IMG/VR virus record: IMGVR_UViG_3300028840_002431
Span: 186,001 to 250,000 of that record
Reading direction: 5' to 3' (one strand)
DNA: 64,000 bases
This document shows, piece after piece, positions 1 through 61,379 of the stretch. The first letter of the stretch is position 1; each line of letters opens with the position of its first letter. The notes under the pieces are model-generated. The model had not been told where the DNA came from and searched no databases. It was given only the letters and a program-made list of their open reading frames with translations. The position numbers were made by a program, and so were the translations under genes.

Positions 1-100
1 AACAGGCACGCTCGCCGGACTCGTCCTTGCCGTGGAAGGGGAAGTCGTGGGAGCGGACCGTGTCACCAACTTTGATTTCGTTATTTCCGTTGTTGTTCAT
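1..100 (-). CDS. hypothetical protein, partial (runs off window start)
   Basis: ATG at 100 lies 7 nt after the class A motif; MNNNGNNEIKVGDTVRSHDF... open to window edge. Confidence 0.7.
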   Translation of the reverse strand, partial: MNNNGNNEIKVGDTVRSHDFPFHGKDESGERAC

Positions 101-107
101 ATACGGT

Positions 108-134
108 CTACCCCCATGGTCAGGTGAATCTAAA
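108..134 (-). promoter_or_regulatory. class A promoter-like motif TTTAGA-N17-GTAG
   Basis: motif repeated with the same spacing at >12 sites. Confidence 0.7.
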
Positions 135-136
135 GT

Positions 137-607
137 TTAAATTGCCGCTTCCGTGAGTTTTCTGAACTCTCCCATCCAGGAGCGGTCCAGCCGACGGCGC
201 TTCTTCTGGACCGTGTGAGGCTCACCGTCCTCGTCGATCTCGGTCTTGAAAATCGGATTCGCCTCACGCCATGCGGTTTGGGAAGCCACGAACTCAGCCT
301 TGTTCTGTTTGGCTTGGGCCACGAGGGCGTCGAAGTCCACGTCGGGAACCTTGCCTGTGTCCAGCCAAGCGTGGATCAGGTAAAAGAAGCGGTCCCGTGG
401 CTCGAACTCGTAGTCCGACTTCTTGTAGAACTTGACGCTGTTGACGGCGTGGCCGCCCGCAGTCGGCTCCATGCTGATCCGGCCAAGCTGGACACCCTCG
501 TGCTGGACGAATATTCTCACCCAGCCGCGACCGGCCCGGACCGGTTTAAACCGGTACTCCGGAAAGGCAGACTCTAACGCGGTTTTGAAGGTTTCGATTG
601 TCGTCAT
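137..607 (-). CDS. hypothetical protein
   Basis: 156 aa ORF packed against upstream ORF. Confidence 0.75.
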   Translation of the reverse strand: MTTIETFKTALESAFPEYRFKPVRAGRGWVRIFVQHEGVQLGRISMEPTAGGHAVNSVKFYKKSDYEFEPRDRFFYLIHAWLDTGKVPDVDFDALVAQAKQNKAEFVASQTAWREANPIFKTEIDEDGEPHTVQKKRRRLDRSWMGEFRKLTEAAI

Positions 608-608
608 G

Positions 609-1043
609 TTATCGCCCCTGGTAGGAGTAGGCTTCGCCCTCGCTCACCCTGCGGCCCATCTCGCGCTCCAACTCACGAAGCTTTCGGTTCAGGGAGGCAG
701 CCCGTTTGCGCACCTGAGCGGGCGGCAGTTCGCCGTCGCAACTGAGGTTTTCCGGACTCAGGCAGCAATAGACGCTCAGGATGTCGTCCATGATTTCCGC
801 TTCGGAACGCTTCGGCTTGGGAGCCTCCGGAGCGGGAGCCGACGACCCGTTGGCCGGGCGGCACAGGCTCTTGGCCACCTTCCATTCGGTGCCGATCGCG
901 TAGTCCTTCTGGGTGCCCCTGGACTCGTCCTGACGCACCTTCACGGTCTTGCGGTTGACCTTGACCACCGTGCCGTGGGTTTGCTCACCGTTGGGCCGCC
1001 CGAAGACGACCTTCATGCCTTTGTGGAATTCTTGTGTCATCAT
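609..1043 (-). CDS. hypothetical protein (SH3-like N-terminus possible)
   Basis: 144 aa; ATG 7 nt after class A motif. Confidence 0.8.
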   Translation of the reverse strand: MMTQEFHKGMKVVFGRPNGEQTHGTVVKVNRKTVKVRQDESRGTQKDYAIGTEWKVAKSLCRPANGSSAPAPEAPKPKRSEAEIMDDILSVYCCLSPENLSCDGELPPAQVRKRAASLNRKLRELEREMGRRVSEGEAYSYQGR

Positions 1044-1050
1044 ACCCGGT

Positions 1051-1077
1051 CTACCCCTCAGGCCGGGCCAATCTAAA
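1051..1077 (-). promoter_or_regulatory. class A promoter-like motif
   Basis: TTTAGA-N17-GTAG-N7-ATG. Confidence 0.7.
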
Positions 1078-1099
1078 ACTTAAATTCAGGAATTTAACC

Positions 1100-1126
1100 T
1101 TTGAATTCACCCTTCCCTGGCAGTAG
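1100..1126 (+). promoter_or_regulatory. class A promoter-like variant (divergent)
   Basis: TTTGAA-N17-GTAG followed by SD AAGGAG and ATG 1146. Confidence 0.55.
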
Positions 1127-1145
1127 TCCAGGAAAGGAGACAATC

Positions 1146-1610
1146 ATGCACGAATCGATAATTGACCCCACCTTCGGCATTTCGAGTGCGGCCAGAGCCG
1201 TAATGGCTCTTCTGGACATCCACCCCCTCAACGTCGTGGACGAAGGCCCGGACGAAAAGGACGTGCGTTTCACGACCTACACGTTCTACCATGGCCGCGA
1301 GAAGGGCATCACCGTCCTCGTGGGCTTCGCGTGCCACAAGAAGGTCCTCGTGGTGTCGTTCGGTGAGTGCGCGAGTAGCGACTCCATCTACCTGGACTCC
1401 TGGACGACCAACATGTCGGTGTACGATCCGCCGACGTGGAGAGACCGGCCCGACGAAGCGGAAGACGAGAGATATACGAGCCGCAACCCTCAGAAAGTGG
1501 CGGACAAGGCCATAACCAAGATGCGGGCCTTCTACAAGGAGTTCAAGCGGTTCAAGCGGGCCAAAGCCAAGACGCGGGCCAAGAGGGCAGAAAATCGTAG
1601 GGCGGCGTAA
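1146..1610 (+). CDS. hypothetical protein
   Basis: AAGGAG SD before ATG 1146. Confidence 0.75.
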   Translation: MHESIIDPTFGISSAARAVMALLDIHPLNVVDEGPDEKDVRFTTYTFYHGREKGITVLVGFACHKKVLVVSFGECASSDSIYLDSWTTNMSVYDPPTWRDRPDEAEDERYTSRNPQKVADKAITKMRAFYKEFKRFKRAKAKTRAKRAENRRAA

Positions 1611-1656
1611 AAAAGTTTTTAGGTTCCGGTCGCCCGTCTGTAAGGGGCGTAAGAGG

Positions 1657-1856
1657 TCTTTGACAAGTCGGTTGTTTGACAGGGGCGTAGCTTAAGGACA
1701 AGCACGGAAAAGCCCGGCTTGGGGCGTACGACCCGAGACGAGAAGTTCACATTAGGCCAATGTGGACGCCGTGTTTGAAAGCGCTCAGCTAATACCTGAG
1801 AGATTTCGGTAGCGCGTAAGCAATCCCGTCCGCCCCTGTGAGACAACCGGCAAAGA
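1657..1856 (+). ncRNA. candidate structured ncRNA or leader RNA, ~200 nt
   Basis: nested helices 1667-75/1843-51, 1679-87/1831-39, 1690-94/1817-21, 1701-07/1769-75, 1718-23/1732-37, 1745-53/1759-67, 1781-85/1811-15; class A-like motif at 1618-1643 upstream. Confidence 0.6.
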
Positions 1857-1862
1857 AACCAA

Positions 1863-2168
1863 ATGAAATACTCCACAAGATTGGCAAACGAACTCAGGGT
1901 GGCCTTGTTTGACCGGGATGACCAGTCGTTCAAAGACAAAGGGGACCCGGTCTTCTACAGGCCCAAGGATGGTCGCCTGACGGAAGCAAAAGAGACATGG
2001 GCGATCCACGGTGTCTGCCTCGAATGCCACCGGCTCAGTCTCAGCGTTGCCCGTTGCGCCGATTGCGGCACTGCTTATGCCGAAGACGACTTACAGGGCG
2101 TAAAGGCCGAACGGATGGTCGCCGCCCAACTGTTCACCGCCGCGAGAATCATACGGGAGAGCCGATGA
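1863..2168 (+). CDS. hypothetical Zn-binding protein
   Basis: CLEC...CADC. Confidence 0.65.
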   Translation: MKYSTRLANELRVALFDRDDQSFKDKGDPVFYRPKDGRLTEAKETWAIHGVCLECHRLSLSVARCADCGTAYAEDDLQGVKAERMVAAQLFTAARIIRESR

Positions 2169-2587
2169 TCTGCCAGCGCTCCGGGTATTGCTGTATCACG
2201 ATGCCGGTCGTGGTCATCGTTCCGACAAGCAAGCATGGGGAATGGATGCCGCCCCCGCAACCAAGCTACCGGGCATACTTCAAGGACGGAAGCGTCCGGT
2301 GTCCGAACCTGATATTCGACGGGCCGGAAGCCTCTTGCAACGTCCATGACGAACCCTGGTACAAACACACCCCGTGCTTCACCTACGGCAACCCGGACCT
2401 GGACCCGGATTTCATCCCCAAGATCGGGCGGCCGTGCCCCGTGGGTCAGGCCGTTCTCAAGAAGTTCGGGAGTCTGGTCGGGCTGTACGGGGACCCGAAA
2501 GACGAAGGCGTGAGGTTGATACGCGAACTCAAACCGGAAGAGGTCGAGCCGTTCCTACTGGGAAGGCTCACGGGACACGTCTGGTGA
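2165..2587 (+). CDS. cysteine-cluster (YkgJ-like) protein
   Basis: MICQRSGYCC...CPNL...CNVH...PC; ATGA overlap with previous stop. Confidence 0.55.
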   Translation: MICQRSGYCCITMPVVVIVPTSKHGEWMPPPQPSYRAYFKDGSVRCPNLIFDGPEASCNVHDEPWYKHTPCFTYGNPDLDPDFIPKIGRPCPVGQAVLKKFGSLVGLYGDPKDEGVRLIRELKPEEVEPFLLGRLTGHVW

Positions 2588-8340: not shown

Positions 8341-8350
8341 CGGTGTAATA
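8341..8350 (+). promoter_or_regulatory. class B promoter-like motif
   Basis: CGGTGTAATA; GTG 8357 is 8 nt after GTAA; heads the + strand cluster. Confidence 0.6.
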
Positions 8351-8356
8351 TATCGA

Positions 8357-8563
8357 GTGTCCGATCCGTTCATGCACAATTTCAAGCTCATAAAACTCCA
8401 GAAGGCTCTGCGGGATATCGAGGCTCACATCCCTGACGGTTGGAAGTGGGAGATAACATTCTGGCGGGATGACGGGGAACGCTGGAAGGTCAACCCACGC
8501 GGGTGTTATCAGGAGAGCCGTGCCGCCGTCAATGTCAAGATAACAGACCTTGGGAGTGTGTGA
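8357..8563 (+). CDS. hypothetical protein
   Basis: 68 aa, coupled to next ORF. Confidence 0.55.
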   Translation: MSDPFMHNFKLIKLQKALRDIEAHIPDGWKWEITFWRDDGERWKVNPRGCYQESRAAVNVKITDLGSV

Positions 8564-29012: not shown

Positions 29013-29516
29013 TCAGTAGGAGTAGAGGGCGTCCAGGGCCTTCTTGTGGGCCACTCTGTAGTGAGCGTCGGAGCACTTCTGACAGTACAGGCCGGGCTTG
29101 CCCTTGATCCGGCGAAACCGCTTGGAGGTCTTGATCTGTTTCTTGCCGCACTTGGCGCAGATTCGCTTCGTGGAGAGAGCCTCGATCGGCTCGGTTCCGG
29201 CCTCTCCCGGCCTCTGTACGGCCCCGATGTAGAGATAACCGTAAGAAGCGTTGGTGCAAGCTTCCAGGCGGTATACGCCCTCTTCGAACACCAGGACGGT
29301 GTCGGCGTCCGACGTGGACAGGGAAACGTCCTGGACCTCTTCTCGGAGCCAGGGTAGCGCCCGCTTGTTGATCCAGTCGAAGAAGCGCTCGTCGCCGCCC
29401 TCACCGGACTGACGGTTGAACACCAAGTCGATGTAATAGTCCCGGCTGGAACCCTGATAGATCGCCCGCGCTCCCCAGTGTGCCACCTTCTCGCCTTCGA
29501 TGGGTCTTCCAAACAT
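29013..29516 (-). CDS. hypothetical protein with C-terminal Zn finger
   Basis: NASYGYLYIGA; CAKC...CQKC; SD GGAGG. Confidence 0.75.
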   Translation of the reverse strand: MFGRPIEGEKVAHWGARAIYQGSSRDYYIDLVFNRQSGEGGDERFFDWINKRALPWLREEVQDVSLSTSDADTVLVFEEGVYRLEACTNASYGYLYIGAVQRPGEAGTEPIEALSTKRICAKCGKKQIKTSKRFRRIKGKPGLYCQKCSDAHYRVAHKKALDALYSY

Positions 29517-29541
29517 GTTTCGCTCCCTCCTTATACCCGGC

Positions 29542-29568
29542 CTACCGGCAAGCCTGACTGAATCTAAG
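29542..29568 (-). promoter_or_regulatory. class A promoter-like motif
   Basis: CTTAGA-N17-GTAG. Confidence 0.65.
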
Positions 29569-30066: not shown

Positions 30067-30209
30067 TAGAGCACCTGTTCTTCCATCAGCCGACGGAGCT
30101 TATCCTTGGCCCTCTTGAGCCGACGATCCTTCATCGGGCCGCCCTTCTTGGCAATGGCCGCCTCGACGTGAGGATTGCGCCTCTTCGGCTCTTTTCGTGG
30201 CTTGGGCAT
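30066..30209 (-). CDS. small basic protein (47 aa)
   Basis: ATG 7 nt after class A motif; MPKPRKEPKRRNPHV... Confidence 0.65.
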   Translation of the reverse strand: MPKPRKEPKRRNPHVEAAIAKKGGPMKDRRLKRAKDKLRRLMEEQVL

Positions 30210-30216
30210 ACCCTTA

Positions 30217-30243
30217 CTACGCATGAGCCTAGCGTAATCTAAA
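30217..30243 (-). promoter_or_regulatory. class A promoter-like motif
   Basis: TTTAGA-N17-GTAG-N7-ATG. Confidence 0.7.
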
Positions 30244-31505: not shown

Positions 31506-32050
31506 TACCCCTCCGGAAAACGATACTTGAACTGACTCGAAACCTTGGTTGTGGAACGCGGCCCCCAGAAGTTGGTTGCCTGTAAATTCTTCCAGACGAT
31601 CCCTTCCAGCATGGGATCGTCGGCTTGTTCCAGGAACCGTTTGTAGTCGGTAGCCGGGAACGACTCGACACACGAAACCGTGTACCCAAGACGGCACACC
31701 GGTTCGCTGAGAGAGCCTTCCAAGTGATGTAGACGTGGGCCGTAGTGGGTCTTGAAAACACGCTCACCGGCCAGAAGAGCATAGTCCCATACGAAAATCC
31801 GACCGTCCCTGAGCAGTTCACCATCACCGAACCAGGGGTGGGCCAGCGGGAGTTCGGAGAGCCAGTCCCACTCGGGTAGAAACCACTCGCGCTTCTCCCG
31901 GCTAAAGAGTCGAACCTTGCCGTTGCAGTCGATCTCGATCCGCTTCCCGTTCCACTTCGGTTGTAGGACCCAGTTTTTCAGGTCCCCAAGCTCTGGGATC
32001 AACTTCTCGATGTTGAAAATCTCGATCGGTTTGTTAGGGAAAAAGAACAT
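31505..32050 (-). CDS. minimal ATP-dependent ligase-like nucleotidyltransferase
   Basis: motif I QPKWNGKR, III DGEL, IIIa VWD, IV EGIVWK, V QFKYR; no OB domain. Confidence 0.75.
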   Translation of the reverse strand: MFFFPNKPIEIFNIEKLIPELGDLKNWVLQPKWNGKRIEIDCNGKVRLFSREKREWFLPEWDWLSELPLAHPWFGDGELLRDGRIFVWDYALLAGERVFKTHYGPRLHHLEGSLSEPVCRLGYTVSCVESFPATDYKRFLEQADDPMLEGIVWKNLQATNFWGPRSTTKVSSQFKYRFPEG

Positions 32051-32058
32051 TACCTCTT

Positions 32059-32085
32059 CTACAGTTGAGGGTGGCGAAATCTAAA
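32059..32085 (-). promoter_or_regulatory. class A promoter-like motif
   Basis: TTTAGA-N17-GTAG-N8-ATG. Confidence 0.7.
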
Positions 32086-32407
32086 TCTCGTAAATCGCGG
32101 AGTACCAACAGGTACACTGTTCGGCGTACAGACCGGCCGGTCGGAGAGCGTCGTTCATCTCCTCGACTAGGGTGTATTGCTCGTAGTCCCAACTGAAAAA
32201 CGGGGCCACGTCACCGCCGTCGTGAACCACGACCAGCTTCGACTCCCGGCCGTATTTTTCACCCCGGTCGGTCCATTCCTCCGGGCTGTAGAAAGCCTTG
32301 CAGCCGCCCGTGTCGGTTCTCCTATGCTTGCGGAGAACCTCCATGACGATCTCGTGGGCCTTGTTGCCCTTCTCGCTGAGTCCTTCCGGTCTTTCCAATG
32401 TGGCCAT
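32081..32407 (-). CDS. hypothetical protein
   Basis: SD AGGAGG. Confidence 0.75.
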   Translation of the reverse strand: MATLERPEGLSEKGNKAHEIVMEVLRKHRRTDTGGCKAFYSPEEWTDRGEKYGRESKLVVVHDGGDVAPFFSWDYEQYTLVEEMNDALRPAGLYAEQCTCWYSAIYEI

Positions 32408-32427
32408 TTCTTTGCCTCCTACCTGGA

Positions 32428-32454
32428 TTACAGATAGACGGCCGCTAACCTAAA
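32428..32454 (-). promoter_or_regulatory. class A promoter-like motif
   Basis: TTTAGG-N17-GTAA. Confidence 0.6.
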
Positions 32455-33883: not shown

Positions 33884-34162
33884 TCAGCGGCTCTTGTTCA
33901 GGGCTTGCTCACCCGGCGAACCCAACTGGCGAAGGGCGGGGAGCATGGCGGTGAGGTGCTTACAGCGACGGTGGCGAATCCAGCCCATGCACGAACACTC
34001 CCACTGACCGTGGGTAGAACCACCGGTTGCGCGTTGGGCGACCGTGTAGAGCCGGTTGCTGGTACCGGACTTGATGTGCATCCGGTTGATGTGGGTCCTG
34101 TTGTCCGGAAGCGTCTCGGTCCCGAACTCTTCTGCGATTTGTTTGATGATTGCGTGTGCCAT
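33884..34162 (-). CDS. SWIM zinc-finger protein
   Basis: WECSC...CKH; ATG 7 nt after class A motif. Confidence 0.8.
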   Translation of the reverse strand: MAHAIIKQIAEEFGTETLPDNRTHINRMHIKSGTSNRLYTVAQRATGGSTHGQWECSCMGWIRHRRCKHLTAMLPALRQLGSPGEQALNKSR

Positions 34163-34169
34163 ACCCGGT

Positions 34170-34196
34170 CTACTCCTGTGCTCTGGTGAATCTAAA
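34170..34196 (-). promoter_or_regulatory. class A promoter-like motif
   Basis: TTTAGA-N17-GTAG-N7-ATG. Confidence 0.7.
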
Positions 34197-35234: not shown

Positions 35235-35440
35235 CGCTCCGCCTTCCAGCGCTCCAAGGCCGTCTCTTCGGCCTTCTCGCGCTCCAAAGTAAACACGTGG
35301 TACCGCGTCTTGCACTGACTGGGGCGGCCGATGTAGACGTAGAACCCGGCCGGGTTCCCCAAACTGGTTCTGGGGCGGCTCTTGATGACGACCTTTTCCC
35401 CGCCCACCGTGGTCGTCCTTTGCTTTATCACCGTGCCCAT
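35231..35440 (-). CDS. hypothetical protein
   Basis: ATG 7 nt after class A motif. Confidence 0.7.
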   Translation of the reverse strand: MGTVIKQRTTTVGGEKVVIKSRPRTSLGNPAGFYVYIGRPSQCKTRYHVFTLEREKAEETALERWKAER

Positions 35441-35447
35441 ACTCGAC

Positions 35448-35474
35448 CTACAGGCAGCGAGGGTCGGATCTAAA
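35448..35474 (-). promoter_or_regulatory. class A promoter-like motif
   Basis: TTTAGA-N17-GTAG-N7-ATG. Confidence 0.7.
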
Positions 35475-37167: not shown

Positions 37168-37346
37168 GCGAACCTCGGAGTGTGTTTTGTGATCAGGGCC
37201 TCGCCCATTTGCCAGCGGGCCAAGAAGAGGTGAGCCTTCAAGGAAGCGAGCAAGAACCAGCCGCTGGTGTCGAGTAAAAACCACTCAGGCTCACACCAGA
37301 TCCCCTTGGTCACGTAGACCCGCCATTTCGGTTCGGCTTTAGGCAT
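37164..37346 (-). CDS. hypothetical protein
   Basis: follows class A motif at 37363-37389. Confidence 0.6.
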   Translation of the reverse strand: MPKAEPKWRVYVTKGIWCEPEWFLLDTSGWFLLASLKAHLFLARWQMGEALITKHTPRFA

Positions 37347-37362
37347 ATTGTCCTTACCCTCC

Positions 37363-37389
37363 CTACTACTGACCAGGGCCAGACCTAAG
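37363..37389 (-). promoter_or_regulatory. class A promoter-like motif
   Basis: CTTAGG-N17-GTAG. Confidence 0.6.
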
Positions 37390-38011: not shown

Positions 38012-38461
38012 TCAGGAAATCTCTCCGTCACTGGCCCACTCGACCGCGAACACGACAACGGCCTTGCTGCCGTTGATCTCTTCCGCGATCTTGGTGAACG
38101 AAGCTTGCACGTCGGCGTACGCCTCGTGGTGGTCCGAACCTGAACAGAGGTCGATGGTCTGGCCCGTCTCGATCTCGGCCATGAGTTCCTTGGCCCACTC
38201 TTCCAGGGTTTCCTTGCCCAATTCAGCCGGGTCGAAGTTCTCGACGCAAACGGCCACATTGATGTCTTCGTGGCCCTCGACGACGATGTAGTTGGTACCA
38301 GCGTCATACCCACGAGCACCCCAATACTCGTAAGATCCGATGCCGTCGTTCTCGACGGAGTAATCGACGCGGGCGGTAGAAAGCGCCTCTTCGAGGTCGC
38401 CCAGACCCTCCCAATCGGGGTCATCCATTTCGGGGACTGAAATAAAAATATCTGTTGCCAT
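38012..38461 (-). CDS. acidic hypothetical protein
   Basis: DGIGSYEYWG..GYD; ATG 7 nt after class A motif. Confidence 0.75.
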   Translation of the reverse strand: MATDIFISVPEMDDPDWEGLGDLEEALSTARVDYSVENDGIGSYEYWGARGYDAGTNYIVVEGHEDINVAVCVENFDPAELGKETLEEWAKELMAEIETGQTIDLCSGSDHHEAYADVQASFTKIAEEINGSKAVVVFAVEWASDGEIS

Positions 38462-38468
38462 GACTGTA

Positions 38469-38495
38469 CTACGAATCAGGGGAGTCTAATATAAA
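38469..38495 (-). promoter_or_regulatory. class A promoter-like variant
   Basis: TTTATA-N17-GTAG-N7-ATG. Confidence 0.6.
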
Positions 38496-38872: not shown

Positions 38873-38879
38873 AAGAAAC

Positions 38880-38956: not shown

Positions 38957-38965
38957 GGAGGACAA

Positions 38966-40048: not shown

Positions 40049-40126
40049 CCGCCCGTAGCTCAATTTGGTTAGAGTCCCCCGCTCATAACGGGGAAGTTGT
40101 TGGTTCGAGTCCAACCGGGCGGACCA
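40049..40126 (+). tRNA. tRNA(CAT), Met or Ile2
   Basis: CCGCCCG/CGGGCGG-ACCA; CCCCG-CTCATAA-CGGGG; class B motif at 39981 upstream. Confidence 0.9.
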
Positions 40127-43520: not shown

Positions 43521-43594
43521 GGAGTGTCGCCAAGAGGATTGGCCCCGGTTTCCTAAACCGGTCAACGCAGGTTCGAATCCTGTCACTCCCGCCA
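43520..43594 (+). tRNA. tRNA-Arg(CCT)
   Basis: GGGAGTG/CACTCCC-GCCA; CCGGT-TTCCTAA-ACCGG. Confidence 0.9.
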
Positions 43595-44078: not shown

Positions 44079-44110
44079 CACGGGCCGAGAGCGGTGTAAT
44101 ATATGTAGCC

Positions 44111-44335
44111 ATGCACACCGCTTTCACAAGGCTACTCTGTCTCGTCTTTGGCCATAAGTGGTATTGGTTTTTGGCCAAAGGCGATGACGGAGAACCCGGC
44201 GAGGACAAGTGCTTTCGCTGCGGACTCAGAAGAGACAACCATGACCTGCCATGCCGGTGTGTCACAAGAGGGTGCCGGTGTACGCCCGGTGGTGTAATTA
44301 AATACTACCACCCCGACGAACGGAGCCTTTACTGA
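44111..44335 (+). CDS. small Cys-rich protein (DUF1660-like start)
   Basis: LLCLVFGHKW...CFRCG; class B motif at 44092. Confidence 0.55.
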   Translation: MHTAFTRLLCLVFGHKWYWFLAKGDDGEPGEDKCFRCGLRRDNHDLPCRCVTRGCRCTPGGVIKYYHPDERSLY

Positions 44336-47787: not shown

Positions 47788-48408
47788 TCAGGCACCATCT
47801 CTCACGTAATCGAAATACGACCGCATGGGAGCCGCACACTTCGAGCATCGTATTTGGGAACCGGAAGACGACTCCACGGTCATTGTGGACAGATGGTCAC
47901 ACCCGTCTCTGAAAGCGGATGTGTGGAAACGTATATCCTTTTCTGTCGCAACGGCGACAAACCCGTTCGGATGCAAGACCTTGAACTTATTGTCGGCCGC
48001 GTCCACGAACAGCATGGCTCTCTCCGTCGCGGGAGGTCTAACGGTTTTGGTTTCGAGCTTCACAATCTCTTCTAGTTCCGCCGCGAGATCACACGCAGAC
48101 ACCGTGAGACCGAAGCCGTTAACACTTCGAACTTGCAGAGAAAGGACGGCTCCATAGCTCACCCAAGGAGTAATATGAATCGTGCGACGAACAACGTTGG
48201 TTCCCAAGTCTTCGTGAACCCTGTTGGTGCAATCTAACACCTGACCGTTGAGCGACACGCGATCCTCTACTACAGCGGCATTGGTGGGAAAAGTCGCGTT
48301 TGAGTGAACGGTGTACCGCCCTGGCTGTGGAACGGTGAGGTCGATCACGTCGATCCACACACTCGACGATGTCGAAAACGGCACCGCTCCGATCACTTGC
48401 CACTGCAT
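47788..48408 (-). CDS. hypothetical protein
   Basis: ATG 9 nt after class B motif. Confidence 0.65.
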   Translation of the reverse strand: MQWQVIGAVPFSTSSSVWIDVIDLTVPQPGRYTVHSNATFPTNAAVVEDRVSLNGQVLDCTNRVHEDLGTNVVRRTIHITPWVSYGAVLSLQVRSVNGFGLTVSACDLAAELEEIVKLETKTVRPPATERAMLFVDAADNKFKVLHPNGFVAVATEKDIRFHTSAFRDGCDHLSTMTVESSSGSQIRCSKCAAPMRSYFDYVRDGA

Positions 48409-48416
48409 CCTTTACA

Positions 48417-48439
48417 ATTACACCGCTTTTCGGTGTAAT
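48417..48439. promoter_or_regulatory. palindromic back-to-back class B motifs
   Basis: ATTACACCG-CTTTT-CGGTGTAAT between divergent ATGs 48408 and 48447. Confidence 0.7.
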
Positions 48440-48446
48440 TCTAGCT

Positions 48447-48881
48447 ATGATTATCAACCTCCTAGGCCCACACGCGATCTTACACCCGTACGCGGACCGG
48501 GAAAGGGACACGTTCAGCGTCTTGACCTACGACACGCGGAAAGACGGGCTAACTTCACTCTTTAACGGTCTGGTGTACGAAGAGGTCGGAGGCTCCCACA
48601 AACACATCCTCCAAGACGATCTCTGTATGGTTTGTGACGGCGTCTTGAGAACAGTGGTGCCCGTCCAGACGAGCAAGGTGTTCAAATGCGGGCACGTCTG
48701 GATAGACCCGGCTCTCAAAGGCGAGCCAGAGAAAGAACGCCAACGCATTTCAACCATCAAATTGCAGGATGGGATGCTGGTCGTTCAGGACGACAAGAAC
48801 ATCGTACTGGCCGACTTGTCTCTCGATATCGAGCTACATAACCCCGAACTCCAAACTCTGTGGGACCACCTGAAACTCTAG
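48447..48881 (+). CDS. hypothetical protein
   Basis: ATG 8 nt after class B motif; ends QTLWDHLKL. Confidence 0.7.
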   Translation: MIINLLGPHAILHPYADRERDTFSVLTYDTRKDGLTSLFNGLVYEEVGGSHKHILQDDLCMVCDGVLRTVVPVQTSKVFKCGHVWIDPALKGEPEKERQRISTIKLQDGMLVVQDDKNIVLADLSLDIELHNPELQTLWDHLKL

Positions 48882-51308: not shown

Positions 51309-51334
51309 ATTCTCTTTTCACGGTGTAGTATAAG

Positions 51335-53393: not shown

Positions 53394-53824
53394 TTCTTTT
53401 TCTTGCCCTTGAGAAGGTAGCCGTAACAGTGCCAGGGGTAGCCCGTCGCAACATTGACCCCGACGATGATATGTCTGAGTTCGACGACCTCCCCATGGAA
53501 CGCCGCCAGATATTCCTGGAACCAGCGGCCGGTGCCCTTCTCGGCTTTTTCGTCCGCCGTCTTGCGGGCAGCTTTGGCCTTTTCGTAGTCCCACTGCTCG
53601 ATACGATCGGAGTAGTTGTAATGAAGTCCGGCTTGCTTCGCGCCGAAAATCGTTACGTCTTTCCCGCTTGAGAACCGTGAGTCGGTGTAGTGTGGGTACA
53701 AGTCCGGGAGTTGAGTGTCGAGGTTCGTTGTCGCGAATCGTGGCATTCTGTGACCATCCATTCTGACATACGGGTTGTCCCAGAATACTTCGTCGTCGTA
53801 GTAACCATCATACTTTGGCATCAC
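53390..53824 (-). CDS. hypothetical protein
   Basis: YSDRIEQWD...NVATGYP. Confidence 0.7.
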   Translation of the reverse strand: MMPKYDGYYDDEVFWDNPYVRMDGHRMPRFATTNLDTQLPDLYPHYTDSRFSSGKDVTIFGAKQAGLHYNYSDRIEQWDYEKAKAARKTADEKAEKGTGRWFQEYLAAFHGEVVELRHIIVGVNVATGYPWHCYGYLLKGKKKK

Positions 53825-54774
53825 TCACTCCGATCTTTCGGGTCCACATATTTCACCTTGAGGATATCGTATAGCTCGACCTCGAACTCTCCGCCGATAC
53901 GCTCCTCTTCGACCATGTCGCCTTTGCTGGCGTTCGGTCCCTTGAAGAAGCCATACTCGTTGACCAGGATTCCCCGACTCTTGGCGATTCCTCGAAGCCG
54001 TATATTATGGGCCTTGCTGCCGGTGAAGTAGCAGAGTGCCGCGCCCCAACACAGCGGGTCCACAATCAACAGATCGACGTTGACAATGAAGTTGCCTTGG
54101 TAACGCAAAGTGATCTTCTTGTCCCCGGCCGACTGGATTTCACCGAAGCGAGCGGCCACCGACCTGACCTGAGCCATGGCCTTGGGGTTGTCGAGCGACA
54201 GGAGGATGTCAACGTCCTTCACCGTCTCCGACTCCCGACGGAAGGAACCGGCCGGGCTGCACCGATACACACCGTCGATGGCTTTCAATTGCTTTACCAT
54301 CTTCTCGACGAATGGTTTCACCACCTCACGCGGTAGGCGGCCCTGTTTCATCTGTTCGAGGCCGATCTTGGCTCGCTCCAGGAGGTCCGGATCGTCGCCG
54401 GTTGCCTCCAAGAGAACGATGAGTTCTTCCACACTCTCCACACCATGGAGACGGGCAATATTGAAGGCCGACACCGGGCCGACTCCGGGAATAGCTTGTA
54501 GAGCAAACGCCCCCGGAGGAAACTGCTTTTCCAGTTCCTCGATCCGCTTGCACGTGCCGGTTTCCAGGATCTGGTGGATGGTTTCGGCCGTGCTCTTGCC
54601 GATTCCCTCGACTTCCAGGAGGTTGATAGACCCGGCGTGCTCAGGCATATCGCGGACCACACCAGCGACTTTTTCGTACGTCCTGGCCCGCCACTGGTCC
54701 TTTGCGACGCGATAAAGCTTCCCGATATAGGCGAGCTTCTCGGCCAGTTCCTGGTTCGTGGTGGGCACGTACAT
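53821..54774 (-). CDS. polX: family X DNA polymerase (no PHP domain)
   Basis: HhH GIGKSTA and IPGVGP, AGSFRR, DVD, VDL, YFTGSKAHN, NEYG. Confidence 0.9.
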   Translation of the reverse strand: MYVPTTNQELAEKLAYIGKLYRVAKDQWRARTYEKVAGVVRDMPEHAGSINLLEVEGIGKSTAETIHQILETGTCKRIEELEKQFPPGAFALQAIPGVGPVSAFNIARLHGVESVEELIVLLEATGDDPDLLERAKIGLEQMKQGRLPREVVKPFVEKMVKQLKAIDGVYRCSPAGSFRRESETVKDVDILLSLDNPKAMAQVRSVAARFGEIQSAGDKKITLRYQGNFIVNVDLLIVDPLCWGAALCYFTGSKAHNIRLRGIAKSRGILVNEYGFFKGPNASKGDMVEEERIGGEFEVELYDILKVKYVDPKDRSE

Positions 54775-54781
54775 ACCTACA

Positions 54782-54808
54782 CTACGAATCAGCGGGGCTG
54801 ACCCTAAA
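54782..54808 (-). promoter_or_regulatory. class A promoter-like motif
   Basis: TTTAGG-N17-GTAG-N7-ATG. Confidence 0.65.
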
Positions 54809-58482: not shown

Positions 58483-58941
58483 TTACACCGATTTGTCCGG
58501 TATCAGTTCGTAAGGTTTATACGGGAGGATCACGTTGCCGGGTATTATTCTGACCCCATAACTCTCGGCACGGGTCTTGGTTCGCATCTTCCTCGACACC
58601 ACAATCCCTTCTCTCGACATGCCCGTCCCCCTCACACGGACCGGTGTCCCTTTCTTGATGAGGTCCGGGTCCGGGTTGAACTTGGGGCCGAAAACCTCGA
58701 CGGCCCCGTTAATCCCACGTACCAAGTCGTGGTAGGTTCGCGAGGTGTCATACTCCCATACCAGTTTTCCCCGGCGCTCCACCTCGATTTTGAGGCCCTT
58801 GCGCCCACGACCCTCGATTCGGTAACGGCATCCACGTGGGTGTCTGTCTGTGCTGGATTTGCTTTTCCTGACGGACACCTGATAACCGGCGTCCATGGCT
58901 TCGATGGCTTTGCCCAGATCGTGGAGGGTGCGTATGTGCAT
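58483..58941 (-). CDS. hypothetical protein
   Basis: ATG 7 nt after class A motif. Confidence 0.7.
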   Translation of the reverse strand: MHIRTLHDLGKAIEAMDAGYQVSVRKSKSSTDRHPRGCRYRIEGRGRKGLKIEVERRGKLVWEYDTSRTYHDLVRGINGAVEVFGPKFNPDPDLIKKGTPVRVRGTGMSREGIVVSRKMRTKTRAESYGVRIIPGNVILPYKPYELIPDKSV

Positions 58942-58948
58942 ACCCCTC

Positions 58949-58975
58949 CTACCGCTTGGGTTGCCGTAATCTAAG
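58949..58975 (-). promoter_or_regulatory. class A promoter-like motif
   Basis: CTTAGA-N17-GTAG-N7-ATG. Confidence 0.65.
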
Positions 58976-59201
58976 ACTTATTTTGGGACCGCCAGTAGTC
59001 GGCATCTTTACGGACCGGTAACTCCCAGGCATCGACCCTGATATTGGCCAACTGGTCAGATGTCAGGGTCCGGAGAATTTCACGTTGTTCTTCTGGGAGA
59101 CGCTCGATTAGCTGGCCCGGCTTGGGGAACCGACGGCGATCGAACAGACAACACCCGGCCACAACAGTGTCGAGTAATATGCTTTCCGGCGTCTTTTTCA
59201 T
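58971..59201 (-). CDS. hypothetical protein
   Basis: SD GAGG; ends QNKS inside the next motif. Confidence 0.55.
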   Translation of the reverse strand: MKKTPESILLDTVVAGCCLFDRRRFPKPGQLIERLPEEQREILRTLTSDQLANIRVDAWELPVRKDADYWRSQNKS

Positions 59202-59306
59202 TTAGGTTCCCTCTCGCTCGCGGGTAAGCCCAAGGTAATGCCGCAATTTCCGAAAGCAACTTTGGAATTTTGGAGGCTCGTGTGTAACCCTTGAACACAG
59301 GATAAC

Positions 59307-59639
59307 ATGAAGCTCAGCGAAATCGACGAACAAACCTTCACGGAGTTGGACGATGCTTGTGGCGCAGTCCTAAGCGAACTCCGTGCCTATTGCCTGATCA
59401 ACGAATGCGAAGCGGTCCTCACCGTCCGAACGTGTTTGGAAGACTTGCCCAAAGGCGAGATGAAGCTGTACCTCCAAATCGTGAGTGATGGAGATACCGT
59501 GGACTACGCTGTCGCCAAAGTTCGCGGGTCCATCCAGAGAATCGGGTGGAACATCTATCTGGCCGACACGCTGGAAAGTGCCAGAAGCTATGTCGGCCGG
59601 GCAAACGAAAGAATGGCGATCGTCGAGAGGGCGAACTGA
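59307..59639 (+). CDS. hypothetical protein
   Basis: TTTGGA-N17-GTAA (59261-87) upstream. Confidence 0.65.
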   Translation: MKLSEIDEQTFTELDDACGAVLSELRAYCLINECEAVLTVRTCLEDLPKGEMKLYLQIVSDGDTVDYAVAKVRGSIQRIGWNIYLADTLESARSYVGRANERMAIVERAN

Positions 59640-60142
59640 TGAAAGCTCGCAAGTGGACGCTCTGCTTTCGCAAGTGCATCATGGGTTGGCTTCTCGTGTC
59701 TGCCCGCCCAGCCCATGGACGCACCCTCAAAGGCGTGGCTATCCCCAGGCACGTGCTCGATTTCGCGGAAGCCGACGAACGCGGTTTCGTGCGAGACAAA
59801 GAGACCGGTAAGATAATCAGCGGTTTGGTCAACGATGCCTACGAGGGCAAGACGGTCCAGGAGATCGACGACCCCGCCAAGCCGCAAGAAGAGCCGCCCC
59901 GTCTCGACTGGGACGCCAGCGAAACGAAGTACATCGGGTCCGAAGAGGACGGGGTTTACTACGGTGCTGTGGAGAAAAACGGCAAGTGGTGGGCCATGGC
60001 GACCGTGGACAGCGACTCCGGAGGCTTCACCGACTCTCTCCTGGCTGAACTGGGAACGTCTCAGGAGACTGCTCTTCAAGCCGCCAGAGAAGTGGCAGAG
60101 GAGTGGTGTGCCTCAAACGAGGTGCTGGTCGAGTTCTCTTAG
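59639..60142 (+). CDS. hypothetical protein
   Basis: TGATG coupling. Confidence 0.65.
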   Translation: MKARKWTLCFRKCIMGWLLVSARPAHGRTLKGVAIPRHVLDFAEADERGFVRDKETGKIISGLVNDAYEGKTVQEIDDPAKPQEEPPRLDWDASETKYIGSEEDGVYYGAVEKNGKWWAMATVDSDSGGFTDSLLAELGTSQETALQAAREVAEEWCASNEVLVEFS

Positions 60143-61023
60143 ACCGACGCCAGAAGCTTCTTCAACTGCTTTGTGTCGGACATGAGATCCGAGGTCCAGT
60201 CCGCAACCGCCGAGAACGCCTTCTTCACAGCGCCCCAGAGCTTGTCCCAGGTGCGTACGAGCATGTTCCAGATGTCCACGCCTTGCTTGTCCGTGGCGAT
60301 CTTGGGGTTGCTCATCTCCTCTTCGAAGCGGGCAAGCGCTCTCTTGGCCTGAGCCAGAACCTCTTTCTTGGCTAGGTCGTTGCTCGCCTGATGCAAAAGC
60401 ATCTGGAACTGCTTCTCGAAGTCGATGACCGGGGCTTCGACCTCTTCGTGCTTCTCGATGGTGTTCGAAAGCTCTTCGACGGCCTTTCTGGCCTTGACGA
60501 TTTCCTTGCCAGCCATGTTGAGGTCTTTACGAGCACTCTCCAGCCACTTCTCACGCCGCTTGTCCTTGGACCCGCGTGCTATGGCGTCCTCGTGCTTCTT
60601 GATCCTCTCTTCCGCGTCTTCGATGGTCCGCTCCAGATGCTCGATCTCAAGCTGCCACTCCGCCGCCGTCTTCTGCGTATCGTTGATCAGATTCTGACTT
60701 CGGAGATATTCCTTGATCCAGTCCTCGATCTCGTCGCCGGACTTGACCTGGAAAGCTCCATACTGTGCCCGAACGTCAGGCCCGGCCGGTAGCTCGTGAC
60801 CCAGTTTCTTACACTTGTTCTGCCAGTATTTAACAGCCCCTCCGTAACTGAATTTGGGACCCATTTTCTCGACCACGTATTTCCAGGCCAGCAAGACCTT
60901 TGGGTCCAGTACCCCCTCGTCAACCATTTGGAGGATATGCTTGTACTGAGCCGGAATGCGGTAACGATCGTCGGCTTCCAGAAAACGGCGGGCGACACGG
61001 TAGATAAGAGTAGAGGTTTCCAT
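60139..61023 (-). CDS. coiled-coil protein with N-terminal RVARRF motif
   Basis: 294 aa, heptad-rich. Confidence 0.75.
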   Translation of the reverse strand: METSTLIYRVARRFLEADDRYRIPAQYKHILQMVDEGVLDPKVLLAWKYVVEKMGPKFSYGGAVKYWQNKCKKLGHELPAGPDVRAQYGAFQVKSGDEIEDWIKEYLRSQNLINDTQKTAAEWQLEIEHLERTIEDAEERIKKHEDAIARGSKDKRREKWLESARKDLNMAGKEIVKARKAVEELSNTIEKHEEVEAPVIDFEKQFQMLLHQASNDLAKKEVLAQAKRALARFEEEMSNPKIATDKQGVDIWNMLVRTWDKLWGAVKKAFSAVADWTSDLMSDTKQLKKLLASV

Positions 61024-61054
61024 ACCCCGCTCGTTTTATGAAACGAAAACCGAT

Positions 61055-61081
61055 TTTAGGTTTAACGGATTCCGTGTGTAG
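61055..61081 (+). promoter_or_regulatory. class A promoter-like motif
   Basis: TTTAGG-N17-GTAG-N7-ATG (61089). Confidence 0.65.
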
Positions 61082-61088
61082 TGGAGGT

Positions 61089-61379
61089 ATGGATAATAGT
61101 ACCCCCAAACCGGGCGACGTTATCTACGTCCCCTCAAGCTGGTATGTGTATCGAGGCCGGGACGATTTCCATGGAGGTAAGGCCACCGTCTCCGAAGTCA
61201 AAAAGGAGAGCTACGGCACCTTCGTCTCCATCGAATCCCGGCCGGGCCACGGGTATAACTGGGACATCCTGAAAGACAAACAGGAGAAGCTCGCCACCGA
61301 ATATGGCGATACGTGGGCGCACCCGGACCCGGACTACCACCCCGATGTAAACGACGACAACGCCGATTGGAGGCCGTGA
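61089..61379 (+). CDS. hypothetical protein
   Basis: start reassigned from motif spacing. Confidence 0.7.
   Translation: MDNSTPKPGDVIYVPSSWYVYRGRDDFHGGKATVSEVKKESYGTFVSIESRPGHGYNWDILKDKQEKLATEYGDTWAHPDPDYHPDVNDDNADWRP

What the first reader, a model, noticed from the sequence alone, without database searches (positions are those of the whole stretch)
98..61091. Recurrent promoter-like motif (Y)TTAG(R)-N17-GTA(R) with ATG usually 7 nt downstream: apparent leaderless regulon
Seen with exact 17-nt spacing on - at 108-134, 1051-77, 29542-68, 30217-43, 32059-85, 32428-54, 34170-96, 35448-74, 37363-89, 38469-95, 54782-808 and 58949-75, and on + at 1100-26, 59261-87 and 61055-81 (some with variant first boxes). 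Copies with 16-nt spacing lie at 1618 and 23543. At nine sites ATG follows GTAG after exactly 7 nt (8 nt at one more), where +1 is expected; the other gene-linked sites have a short SD leader. The boxes differ from the sigma70 consensus. Inference: these are early promoters read by a phage or alternative sigma factor, producing leaderless mRNAs.
Basis: partly seen in the sequence, partly recalled or inferred. Interest (0 to 1): 0.65.

Follow-up and report, generated by a model that had tools for sequence, protein, structure and literature searches.

The report
Leaderless promoter set of huge phage
The repeated motif is real: it is a two-box, sigma-type promoter of an uncultivated 416-kb phage, placed so that transcripts should begin at the start codon. 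The whole phage clade shares this design, but each lineage has its own upstream box.

Summary

- **Genome.** The window is bases 186001-250000 of a 416.5-kb phage genome from sediment and seawater metagenomes.
- **Motif.** TTAG-N18-GTAR occurs 14 times in the window, against 1.4 expected. A position-weight scan finds 42 sites genome-wide, with consensus AAAWTAA-nyy-TTAGRTT-N15-GTAG-nnnRGG-T-A. Nearly all are intergenic and point at the next gene.
- **Leaderless design.** At 24 of 42 sites an ATG that opens an ORF sits exactly at the predicted +1. At most others a Shine-Dalgarno sequence starts at +1 to +3. One site precedes a tRNA cluster, so the motif is a transcription signal.
- **Second class.** About 117 intergenic sites carry cGGTGTA(A/G)tAtA with no -35 box. 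They share the GTA core and also put start codons 12-13 nt downstream.
- **Relatives.** Related phages keep the geometry at orthologous genes but have other -35 boxes: TAGAGTT, TTGAATT, CTTAAS.
- **Polymerase.** No phage RNA polymerase was found, and consensus sigma-70 promoters are not enriched.
- **Candidate factor.** The clade encodes a divergent sigma-like protein with a nearly invariant putative -10-reading helix and a variable C-terminal helix-turn-helix. It also encodes two proteins with tandem sigma region-4 domains.

Unproven: there are no RNA data, the host is unknown, and "early" timing and the identity of the factor are inferences.

The parts
98..133 (-). Class-1 promoter: box TTAGATT 127-133, GTAG 108-111, predicted +1 = A of ATG at 100. 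The gene runs off the left end of the window (genome 185669-186100, 143 aa).
1041..1076 (-). Class-1 promoter, leaderless: box 1070-1076, GTAG 1051-1054, ATG at 1043. Serves gene 609-1043 (144 aa, weak ProQ-C-like match).
1101..1148 (+). Divergent partner with variant box TTGAATT: GTAG 1123-1126, predicted +1 near 1134, where AAGGAG starts. ATG at 1146; gene 1146-1610.
1619..1651 (+). Class-1 site with spacing one base shorter (TTAGGTT-N14-GTAA). No ORF starts within about 200 nt, so the product is unknown.
23328..23363 (-). Class-1 promoter with box TTATATT, leaderless ATG at 23330; gene 23094-23330 (78 aa).
23544..23576 (+). Class-1 site (TTAGGTT-N14-GTAG) with predicted start about 35 nt before the tRNA cluster at 23611-24612. 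This shows the motif acts in transcription, not translation.
29514..29567 (-). Class-1 promoter: predicted +1 at 29534, followed at once by AAGGAGG. ATG at 29516; gene 29013-29516.
30207..30242 (-). Class-1 promoter, leaderless ATG at 30209; ORF 30066-30209 (47 aa).
32048..32084 (-). Class-1 promoter with a 1-nt leader (GGTAATG), ATG at 32050. Gene 31505-32050 (181 aa; short match to the ATP-dependent DNA ligase domain).
32405..32453 (-). Class-1 promoter: predicted +1 at 32420, where AGGAGG starts. ATG at 32407; gene 32081-32407.
34160..34195 (-). Best-scoring class-1 promoter (44.8 bits), leaderless ATG at 34162; ORF 33884-34162 (92 aa).
35438..35473 (-). Class-1 promoter, leaderless ATG at 35440; ORF 35231-35440 (69 aa).
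37344..37388 (-). Class-1 promoter with a short AAGGA leader, ATG at 37346; ORF 37164-37346.
38459..38494 (-). Class-1 promoter with box TTATATT, leaderless CATG at 38461; gene 38012-38461. On the other strand at about 38547-38575 lies a divergent TTGAATT-N14-GTAT site ahead of the tRNA cluster at 38796-39168.
54772..54807 (-). Class-1 promoter, leaderless ATG at 54774. Gene 53821-54774 (317 aa, DNA polymerase beta/X-like).
58939..58974 (-). Class-1 promoter, leaderless ATG at 58941; gene 58483-58941.
59202..59287 (+).
61056..61091 (+). Class-1 promoter, leaderless ATG at 61089; ORF 61089-61379 (96 aa).
48406..48449 (.). Divergent pair of class-2 (-10-only) sites. GGTGTAA on the minus strand puts ATG 48408 at offset 13 (gene 47788-48408). 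GGTGTAA on the plus strand puts ATG 48447 at offset 12 (gene 48447-48881).
8342..8359 (+). Class-2 site ccGGTGTAAtatat with a GTG start at offset 12 (gene 8357-8563).
61779..61802 (+). Class-2-like site GGGTGTAAt, 18 nt before the GTG start of gene 61800-62915.

Best explanation
The motif is a class of bipartite, sigma-70-family-type promoters of a roughly 416-kb phage.

**Proposed mechanism (inferred).** Bacterial core RNA polymerase, carrying a phage-encoded sigma-like factor, binds four elements:
- an A/T-rich tract at about -45 to -38;
- a -35-like box, TTAGRTT or the variant TTGAATT, at -33 to -27;
- a short -10-like core, (G)GTAG, at -11 to -8;
- a G-rich discriminator, RGG.

It then starts at the A of a conserved T-A step. 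In most units that A is the A of the start codon, so the mRNA has no leader. In the rest, the leader begins with the Shine-Dalgarno sequence.

**Wider system.** The class sits beside a larger -10-only class, cGGTGTA(A/G)tAtA, that uses the same GTA core and the same leaderless placement.

**Candidate factor.** The 319-aa sigma-like protein (genome 100998-101957, minus strand) is the best candidate. Its nearly invariant helix would read the clade-wide GTA core. Its variable C-terminal helix-turn-helix, or the paralogous region-4 protein at 139823-140356, would read the lineage-specific -35 box.

**Shown versus inferred.** Shown: the motif, its placement, its conservation pattern, and the presence of the factors. 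Inferred: the start site, the factor assignment, and the timing (probably early or middle).
For: **Motif**
- It is enriched in the window and genome-wide.
- Column counts show four conserved blocks, including GG-T-A at the predicted start.

**Leaderless placement**
- 24 of 42 sites have an ORF-opening ATG exactly at the predicted +1.
- Others have AGGAGG or AAGGAG starting at +1 to +3, and one precedes a tRNA cluster.

**Position**
- Sites are intergenic and co-oriented with the downstream gene.

**Class 2**
- GGTGTA is the most enriched intergenic hexamer among those with at least 25 intergenic copies. It has 126 intergenic copies, about 30 expected from base composition (my estimate).
- Start codons peak at offsets 12-13 from the G of GTA.

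**Relatives**
- GGTGTA is the top or a leading intergenic-enriched hexamer in the three related genomes tested this way, and in this one.
- Each genome has its own box at the same spacing from GTA, and almost none of the other genomes' boxes.
- Orthologous genes such as LigA and the Pol X-like gene keep the geometry while the box changes.
- 38-65% of box-bearing sites in four genomes have an ORF-opening ATG 10-13 nt (mostly 11-12) from the G of GTA.

**Polymerase**
- No beta, beta-prime or T7-like RNA polymerase domain was found here. No beta-prime catalytic domain was found in this genome or in three relatives, two of them complete.
- Consensus sigma-70 promoters are not enriched: 23 against 27-44 in shuffles.

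**Sigma-like protein**
- It has 56 homologs. JGI names two of them sigma-24 family, and one of those carries PF04542.
- The predicted structure has mean pLDDT 84.
- Its best structural matches are sigma domain 2 of ECF sigmas, sigma-28, sigma-K, sigma-70 and T4 gp55, at Z 5.5-7.7.
- The top Foldseek hit is chain F of the gp79-dependent RNA polymerase open complex; gp79 is a phiEco32 factor according to PMC8948821. I take chain F to be the phage sigma, which I did not verify (E = 0.8).
- Invariant residues cluster in helix 186-216. The C-terminal helix 301-313 has none.

**Region-4 proteins**
- Two proteins carry tandem Sigma70_r4 domains.
Against: - There are no transcript data, so the start site is inferred only from geometry and gene starts.
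- The -10 core lacks the T at -7 that sigma-70-family factors normally need. It also sits about 2 nt nearer the start than is canonical.
- The sigma-like assignment is weak. Pfam gives E = 0.04, the profile search of solved structures found nothing, Foldseek E is 0.8 or worse, and the structural Z-scores are below 8.
- If the phage sigma reads every promoter, something else must express or deliver it first. Its own gene has a roughly 100-nt leader and a TTGACG-N17-GTAGTCC upstream element that a host sigma could read.
- The recognition helices of the conserved region-4 protein are identical in two phages whose boxes differ.
- The paralog of that protein occurs in only two of the six genomes.
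- The genome is only 87% complete by CheckV, so a divergent polymerase could have been missed.
Confidence: 0.5

Rival explanations
1. These are host-read early promoters. The host's primary sigma holoenzyme reads both boxes unaided, as with T4 early promoters. Box differences between phages reflect different hosts.
For: - The architecture matches a sigma-70 promoter: an UP-like tract, a -35 box, 17-bp spacing to TAG, and a GGG discriminator.
- The variant TTGAATT, and the consensus of relative G002, are 4/6 matches to TTGACA.
- Promoters are dense in front of small ORFs of unknown function, which is typical of early regions.
- The relatives range from 44% to 59% GC, so their hosts may differ.
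- No other promoter class is available to start infection.
Against: - By general knowledge, -35 recognition by primary sigma region 4.2 and the need for T at -7 are conserved across bacteria.
- TTAGATT, TAGAGTT and CTTAAS are unlikely primary-sigma -35 consensus sequences.
- The boxes differ between phages whose terminases are 83% identical.
- The -10 region GTAG-nnn has T at the -7 position in only 3 of 42 sites.
Confidence: 0.2
2. This is sigma appropriation by an activator. The host primary sigma reads the GTA/TAnnnT -10. Class 2 would then be extended -10 promoters that are active first. A phage DNA-binding protein would read the -35-position box and recruit polymerase to the weak -10 of class 1, as MotA/AsiA do at T4 middle promoters. 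The candidate is the tandem region-4 paralog at genome 139823-140356.
For: - The class-1 -10 is weak (TAG only), while class 2 has TAATAT, a good TAnnnT.
- The paralog's gene is itself preceded by a class-2 site.
- The paralog occurs in the two genomes with the most unusual boxes. It is only 46% identical between them, in line with their boxes differing.
- The relative that lacks the paralog uses TTGAATT.
Against: - Relative G004 has its own box (CTTAAS) but no paralog in the 400 kb read.
- No AsiA homolog was found.
- The spacing from box to -10 is that of a -35 element (17 bp), not that of a MotA box (about 12 bp, from memory).
- The association rests on only two genomes.
Confidence: 0.2
3. 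An unrecognised phage-encoded RNA polymerase reads the motif. It would be highly divergent, possibly virion-borne, like the enzymes of phiKZ, N4 or crAss-like phages.
For: - Several very large proteins (890-1974 aa) have no family match or only weak tail-like matches.
- The motif is not sigma-70-like at the -10.
- The genome is 87% complete.
Against: - No polymerase domains were found here, and no beta-prime catalytic domain in this genome or in three relatives, two of them complete.
- Known single-subunit or non-canonical phage polymerases use short contiguous promoters. They do not use two boxes with a variable 15-nt spacer and an upstream A-tract (general knowledge).
Confidence: 0.05
4. The sites are not promoters. 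They could be operators of a repressor, or a mobile or recombination repeat that happens to lie upstream of genes.
For: The 7-bp box could be a protein-binding site of any kind.
Against: - The distance to start codons is fixed to the nucleotide, and the initiation context is conserved.
- Sites match the orientation of the downstream gene and also serve tRNA genes.
- The geometry is conserved at orthologous genes while the box sequence changes.
- The spacers are not conserved and are not generally palindromic.
Confidence: 0.03

Closest known systems
Promoters of phage-encoded sigma factors: phiEco32 gp36 (tAATGTAtA, single element) and phage 7-11 gp47 (GTAAtg-N16-aCTA), from PMC8948821
   Same: - A phage sigma redirects host core polymerase to non-sigma-70 motifs.
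- The single-element class has a TGTA core with the start 6-9 bp downstream, which resembles class 2 here (GGTGTAAtAt, start about 5-6 nt after the element).
- Related phages use different motifs matched to diverged sigmas.
- The best Foldseek hit of the sigma-like protein is chain F of the gp79-dependent open complex, which I take to be the phiEco32 sigma (not verified; E = 0.8, not significant).
   Different: - No sequence homology to those sigmas was shown.
- Here there are about 40 plus 100 sites in a 416-kb genome, with both a bipartite and a -10-only class sharing one core.
- The leaderless placement is not described for those phages: the term does not occur in PMC8948821.
T4 transcription programme: early sigma-70 promoters with UP-like tracts, MotA/AsiA middle promoters, gp55/gp33 late -10-only promoters (general knowledge)
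   Same: - Several promoter classes share a -10-like core.
- There is a -10-only class and a sigma domain-2-like phage protein. T4 gp55 is among the structural matches at Z 6.3.
- The early region is dense with promoters and small ORFs.
   Different: - No AsiA was found, and MotA was not searched for.
- The box spacing is that of a -35 element, not of a MotA box.
- T4 mRNAs have leaders.
- The motifs are unrelated in sequence.
Leaderless mRNAs in Actinobacteria, Deinococcus-Thermus and their phages, for example Thermus phage P23-45 with -35-less extended -10 middle/late promoters (recalled from memory, not checked here)
   Same: - A TAnnnT-type -10 lies a few bases upstream of an ATG that is also the start site.
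- There is a -35-independent extended -10 class beside a -35-dependent one.
   Different: - The host is unknown.
- Class 1 lacks T at -7.
- The extension GGTG abuts the TA directly, rather than following the TGn pattern.
- The -35 boxes are lineage-specific.

Membership tests
Bacterial sigma-70-family (bipartite) promoter | Two conserved elements about 17 bp apart, placed about -35 and -10 from the start | tested here: met
   TTAGAT-N17-TAG has fixed spacing in 36 of 42 sites and varies by 1 nt in the rest. The box lies at -33 to -27 and GTAG at -11 to -8 relative to the inferred start.
Bacterial sigma-70-family (bipartite) promoter | A -10 hexamer of TAnnnT type (A at -11, T at -7) | tested here: not met
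   In class 1, T-A is invariant, but the -7 position is T in only 3 of 42 sites. Class 2 (GTAAtAt) does fit TAnnnT, with T in 41% of sites.
Bacterial sigma-70-family (bipartite) promoter | Transcription starts 5-9 nt downstream of the -10 element | not testable with these tools
   No RNA run holds this DNA. The start is inferred from ATG and Shine-Dalgarno placement.
Leaderless mRNA | The 5' end of the transcript coincides with the A of the start codon (0-5 nt leader, no Shine-Dalgarno sequence) | tested here: inconclusive
   Sequence only. 24 of 42 class-1 sites and 38 class-2 sites have an ORF-opening start codon at the predicted +1. 5' ends were not measured.
Sigma-70 family protein (the 319-aa candidate) | Sigma domain 2 (regions 2.1-2.4) | tested here: inconclusive
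   - Pfam Sigma70_r2 gives E = 0.04, below the cut-off.
- One homolog carries PF04542 and a sigma-24 name from JGI.
- About 25 of the top 50 structural matches are sigma factors or sigma domain 2, at Z 5.2-7.7, with 71-98 residues aligned at 2.6-5.4 A in the domain-only matches.
- The profile search of solved structures was empty.
Sigma-70 family protein (the 319-aa candidate) | Sigma domain 4 helix-turn-helix that reads the -35 element | tested here: inconclusive
   - There is no Pfam region-4 hit.
- The C-terminal helices 273-318 have an HTH-like pattern by eye.
- Whole-length alignments to ECF sigmas, sigma-B and sigma-32 span them, but with poor rmsd.
Sigma-70 family protein (the 319-aa candidate) | Binds core RNA polymerase and confers promoter-specific initiation | not testable with these tools
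   This needs biochemistry.
T4 MotA/AsiA sigma appropriation | AsiA-like anti-sigma, plus an activator box centred at -30 about 12 bp from the -10 | tested here: not met
   There is no AsiA hit. The box-to-TAG distance is 17 bp. MotA families were not searched.

The most novel reading that the evidence does not exclude
A whole clade of roughly 400-kb sediment and aquatic phages runs on its own orthogonal sigma/promoter system. One half is frozen: an invariant -10-reading helix paired with the GTA core. The other half evolves fast: a C-terminal helix-turn-helix, or a region-4 paralog, paired with a lineage-specific -35 box. This would give each lineage a private promoter code. Start codons placed at +1 would make most primary transcripts leaderless. 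That could let phage messages bypass host translational control, or profit from changes to initiation made during infection.
Probability: 0.3. Interest if true: 0.7.

Novelty: new variant of a known kind. Interest (0 to 1): 0.55.

Why it matters
- **Transcription map.** Huge uncultivated phages are known almost only as gene lists. Here the sequence alone yields a near-complete map of transcription units for one of them: about 40 bipartite and about 100 -10-only promoters.
- **Leaderless expression.** Leaderless expression appears to be the rule for the first genes of these units across a clade.
- **Natural specificity experiment.** The pattern of a conserved -10 core with switching -35 boxes at orthologous genes is a natural experiment in promoter-specificity evolution. 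It points to testable sigma/promoter pairs that could serve as orthogonal expression parts.
- **Annotation.** The motif corrects many gene starts. Several ORFs of 47-96 aa begin exactly at the predicted +1.
- **Host prediction.** The design may help predict the host, since leaderless translation is common only in some phyla.

Tried and rejected
- **RNA evidence.** The one run search found only DNA metagenomes from sediment and seawater and no RNA. I did not use read laying, because contigs cannot show 5' ends.
- **Host identity.** The CRISPR repeat of relative G002 gave only single chance hits in bacterial genomes. No host could be named.
- **First reading of the pattern.** TTAG-N17-GTAG gave one chance-level hit.
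- **Distant huge phage LR745208.1.** It has no copies of the motif.
- **Exact-pattern scan of five relatives.** It found nothing because their boxes differ. Reading the genomes showed the analogous motifs.
- **Relatives of the Pol X-like protein.** None were found in viral contigs.
- **Phage polymerase and cofactors.** There were no beta, beta-prime, T7-like or AsiA hits. The T7-like search had no positive control, so it carries little weight.
- **Phage translation factors that might favour leaderless mRNAs.** There was no EF-Tu/IF2-type GTPase and no IF3.
- **Alternative register.** I considered TATG as the -10 hexamer with a start inside the ORF. I rejected it because the Shine-Dalgarno sequences of the leader-bearing variants would then lie upstream of the start.
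- **Conserved region-4 protein as the box reader.** This is unlikely, because its recognition helices are identical in two phages with different boxes.
- **Possible third motif.** CCCAGATGTARAT occurs before some structural genes but has too few copies to judge.
- **Non-coding stretch upstream of the sigma-like gene.** It has no Rfam match.

Full report
**What the window is.** The window is bases 186001-250000 of a single 416,539-bp contig with 55% G+C. IMG/VR holds it as a linear virus record, 87% complete by CheckV. It is a phage. It encodes a large terminase, an NAD-dependent DNA ligase, a family-A DNA polymerase, ribonucleotide reductase, helicases and tail-like giant proteins. The window alone has 10 tRNA genes by ARAGORN (Rfam adds one more). 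The same DNA occurs in sediment and seawater metagenomes, and no RNA run holds it.

**The observation.**
None of 100 shuffles reached 14.
- Aligning all genomic copies shows a longer signal. It runs: an A/T-rich tract (AAAWTAA), two or three pyrimidine-rich bases, TTAGRTT, 15 variable G+C-rich bases, GTAG (often preceded by G or GG), three variable bases, RGG, then T-A.
- A two-block weight matrix finds 42 sites above 14 bits, against 0-3 in shuffled genomes. The matrix was trained on the same genome, so this control is lenient.
- The sites lie between 53 and 321 kb. 18 of them are in or at the edge of the window.
- For 37 of the 42, 15% or less of the stretch from box to predicted start lies in called coding sequence, although about 84% of the genome is called as coding. 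All point toward a downstream gene or RNA gene.

**Why these are promoters for leaderless mRNAs.**
- At 24 of 42 sites the A of the conserved T-A is the A of an ATG that opens an ORF of 47-774 codons. Chance would give less than one.
- At most of the others the same GG-T-A context is kept and the next bases are AGGAGG, AAGGAG or similar, 6-13 nt before the ATG. A few have leaders of 1-3 nt.
- The conserved bases upstream of the ATG therefore cannot be a translation signal.
- One site lies 35 nt before a cluster of tRNA genes at 23611-24612. A TTGAATT variant precedes the second tRNA cluster.
- Divergent back-to-back pairs occur, for example 1043-1076 on the minus strand with 1101-1134 on the plus strand.
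- The alternative register, with TATG as the -10 hexamer, would put the start downstream of the Shine-Dalgarno sequences in the leader-bearing variants. I reject it.
- With +1 at that A, the box lies at -33 to -27, GTAG at -11 to -8, and the A-tract at about -45 to -38. That is where the proximal UP-element subsite lies in E. coli (from memory).
- The spacing TTAGAT-N17-TAG is the canonical one. The whole promoter sits about 2 nt nearer the start than usual, and the T at -7 is absent (3 of 42 sites).

**A larger system.**
- Among hexamers with at least 25 intergenic copies, GGTGTA is the most enriched in intergenic DNA.
- It has 126 intergenic copies, about 30 expected from base composition (my estimate). 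117 of them are not class-1 sites.
- Their consensus is cGGTGTA(A/G)tAtA, with no conserved -35 region.
- Start codons that open ORFs of at least 60 codons peak sharply 12-13 nt after the G of GTA: 38 sites, with about 10 more at 14-16 nt.
- I call this class 2. It is a -10-only class whose TAATAT fits TAnnnT.
- Class-1 sites also prefer G-G-T before GTA.
- Class 2 serves a clamp-loader-like ATPase, helicases, the DNA polymerase, a RecD-like protein, a glycosyltransferase and many small ORFs.
- Class 1 serves small ORFs of unknown function, LigA, a Pol X-like protein, a ligase-like fragment and tRNAs.
- Both classes are rare in the structural block at 320-416 kb and 0-40 kb. That block may use a third, unidentified signal.
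- Consensus sigma-70 promoters are not enriched anywhere: 23 against 27-44 in shuffles.

**Relatives.**
- The terminase finds a clade of huge phages in IMG/VR. I read four of them nearly whole and two partly.
- GGTGTA is the top or a leading intergenic-enriched hexamer in G001 (48% G+C), G002 (44%) and G004 (52%), the three tested this way, as it is here.
- Each of these three relatives, like this phage, has a box at the same distance from GTA, but a different one:
  - this phage: TTAGAT/TTAGGT, 26 copies, plus a few TTGAAT;
  - G001: TAGAGT, 18 copies;
  - G002: TTGAAT, 34 copies;
  - G004: CTTAAC/CTTAAG, 35 copies.
- Each genome has almost none of the other genomes' boxes. G003 and G005 showed no clear box.
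- Orthologous genes keep the geometry while the box changes. LigA has TTAGGTG here, TAGAGAA in G001 and TTGAATC in G002. The Pol X-like gene has TTAGGGT here and TAGAGTT in G001.
- In all four genomes 38-65% of box-bearing sites have an ORF-opening ATG 10-13 nt (mostly 11-12) after the G of GTA.
- The design is therefore clade-wide: the -10 core is conserved and the -35 box is lineage-specific.

**Who reads it.**
- No beta, beta-prime or T7-like polymerase domain was found here. No beta-prime catalytic domain was found in this genome or in three relatives, two of them complete. A bacterial core enzyme is the likely catalyst.
- The genome has three sigma-related genes.
- The first is a 319-aa protein at genome 100998-101957, minus strand.
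  - It has a weak Sigma70_r2 match (E = 0.04).
  - It has 56 homologs, all on phage-like contigs where contig size is known. JGI names two of them sigma-24 family.
  - Its predicted structure (pLDDT 84) has sigma domain 2 as its best structural neighbours: ECF sigmas, sigma-28, sigma-K, sigma-70, T4 gp55. About 80 residues align at about 3 A, at Z 5.5-7.7, with a roughly 110-residue insertion.
  - The best Foldseek row is chain F of the gp79-dependent open complex, which I take to be the phiEco32 sigma (not verified; E = 0.8).
  - These scores are individually weak. The case rests on the consistent family of hits.
  - Invariant residues concentrate in helix 186-216, which is rich in aromatic and basic residues. 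The last helix (301-313), after an HTH-like turn, has no invariant residue and differs between this phage, G001 and G002.
  - This mirrors the conserved GTA core and the changing box.
- The second is a 213-aa protein at 33080-33721 with two Sigma70_r4-like helix-turn-helix units (E = 5e-14).
  - Its recognition helices are identical in this phage and G001, so it cannot explain the box difference.
- The third is a 177-aa paralog at 139823-140356, present only in this phage and G001.
  - It is 46% identical between them and is itself preceded by a class-2 site.
- No AsiA homolog was found.

**Weighing the models.**
- A conserved -10 half with a fast-changing -35 half argues that at least the box is read by a phage protein. 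Primary-sigma region 4.2 is too conserved to explain TTAGATT, TAGAGTT and CTTAAS in phages whose terminases are 63-83% identical.
- I cannot tell whether the -10 half is read by the phage sigma-like protein (my preferred model) or by the host primary sigma with a phage activator at the box.
- The main difficulty for the all-phage-sigma model is bootstrapping. The sigma-like gene has a long leader and an upstream TTGACG-N17-GTAGTCC element, also present in G001. A host sigma might use that element. Alternatively, the factor could arrive with the virion.
- "Early" is plausible for class 1, given dense promoters, small ORFs and no structural genes, but it is unproven.

**Comparison with known systems.**
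- The closest described cases are promoters of phage-encoded sigmas. phiEco32 gp36 uses the single element tAATGTAtA, with the start 6-8 bp downstream. Phage 7-11 gp47 uses the bipartite GTAAtg-N16-aCTA. These related phages have diverged sigmas and different motifs (PMC8948821).
- The T4 programme, with a -10-only late class read by a sigma domain-2-like protein, is a looser parallel.
- Leaderless transcripts are well known in some bacterial phyla and some of their phages. I found no description of a promoter code or leaderless design in huge uncultivated phages.
- The founding paper on huge phages mentions phage sigma-70 and AsiA genes, but no promoters and no leaderless mRNAs (PMC7162821).
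- I therefore rate this a new variant of a known kind. It is real and coherent, and of moderate to good interest. The mechanism still needs biochemistry or 5'-end data.

Noticed in passing
whole genome; in the window e.g. 8342-8359, 44093-44113, 48406-48449, 51322-51330, 61779-61802: A second promoter-like class, cGGTGTA(A/G)tAtA, has no -35 box. It has about 117 intergenic copies, with start codons 12-13 nt after the G of GTA. GGTGTA is also the top or a leading intergenic-enriched hexamer in the three related phages tested this way.
   Followed up: yes
relative G002 (IMG/VR record behind L032), about 189.0-193.6 kb, with further copies near 164-165 kb and 335 kb: A phage-borne CRISPR array has about 45 repeats of roughly 36 nt ending in CTGTAATTGAAAC, with a period of about 71-73 nt. 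The repeat core gave only single chance matches in bacterial genomes, so it gave no clue to the host.
   Followed up: partly
genome 101960-102530 (L001 about 1660-2230, minus strand), upstream of the sigma-like gene: A non-coding stretch of roughly 570 nt starts at a class-2 site and is conserved in G001 and G002. It is followed by an A/T-rich region and a roughly 100-nt leader. It has no Rfam match and may be a structured RNA.
   Followed up: partly
genome 342867, 378145, 378965, 407042, 168102, 203593 (outside the window, except 203593 = window 17593): A recurrent CCCAGATGTA(A/G)AT-like element occurs before some structural-block genes and may be a third (late) promoter motif. There are too few copies to judge.
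   Followed up: partly
window 1619-1860 and genome 153631-155700: Class-1 sites are followed by more than 200 nt (window) or about 2 kb (genome) with no convincing ORF, tRNA or Rfam family. These may be unknown non-coding RNAs.
   Followed up: no
window 23611-24612, 38796-39168, 40049-40126, 43520-43594: ARAGORN finds ten tRNA genes, including two tRNA-Ile(GAT), two tRNA-Met(CAT) and two tRNA-Pro. Rfam adds one more at 23989-24087. Each of the first two clusters has its own upstream promoter-like site.
   Followed up: partly
window 53821-54774 (-), 31505-32050 (-), 17618-18868 (+), 40648-41721 (+): Other gene content includes a DNA polymerase beta/X-like protein, a short ATP-dependent ligase-like protein, an SPFH/band-7 protein and a DUF4419 protein.
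   Followed up: no
genome 4000-4860 and 416016-416539 (the contig ends): Both ends of the contig carry Gly-X-Y-type (collagen-like) triplet-repeat DNA. This repeat may be where the assembly broke, which would fit the 87% completeness estimate.
   Followed up: no
genome 139823-140356 (+) and 33080-33721 (-): Two paralogous proteins each carry two sigma region-4-like helix-turn-helix units and no region 2. I did not find this architecture described.
   Followed up: partly
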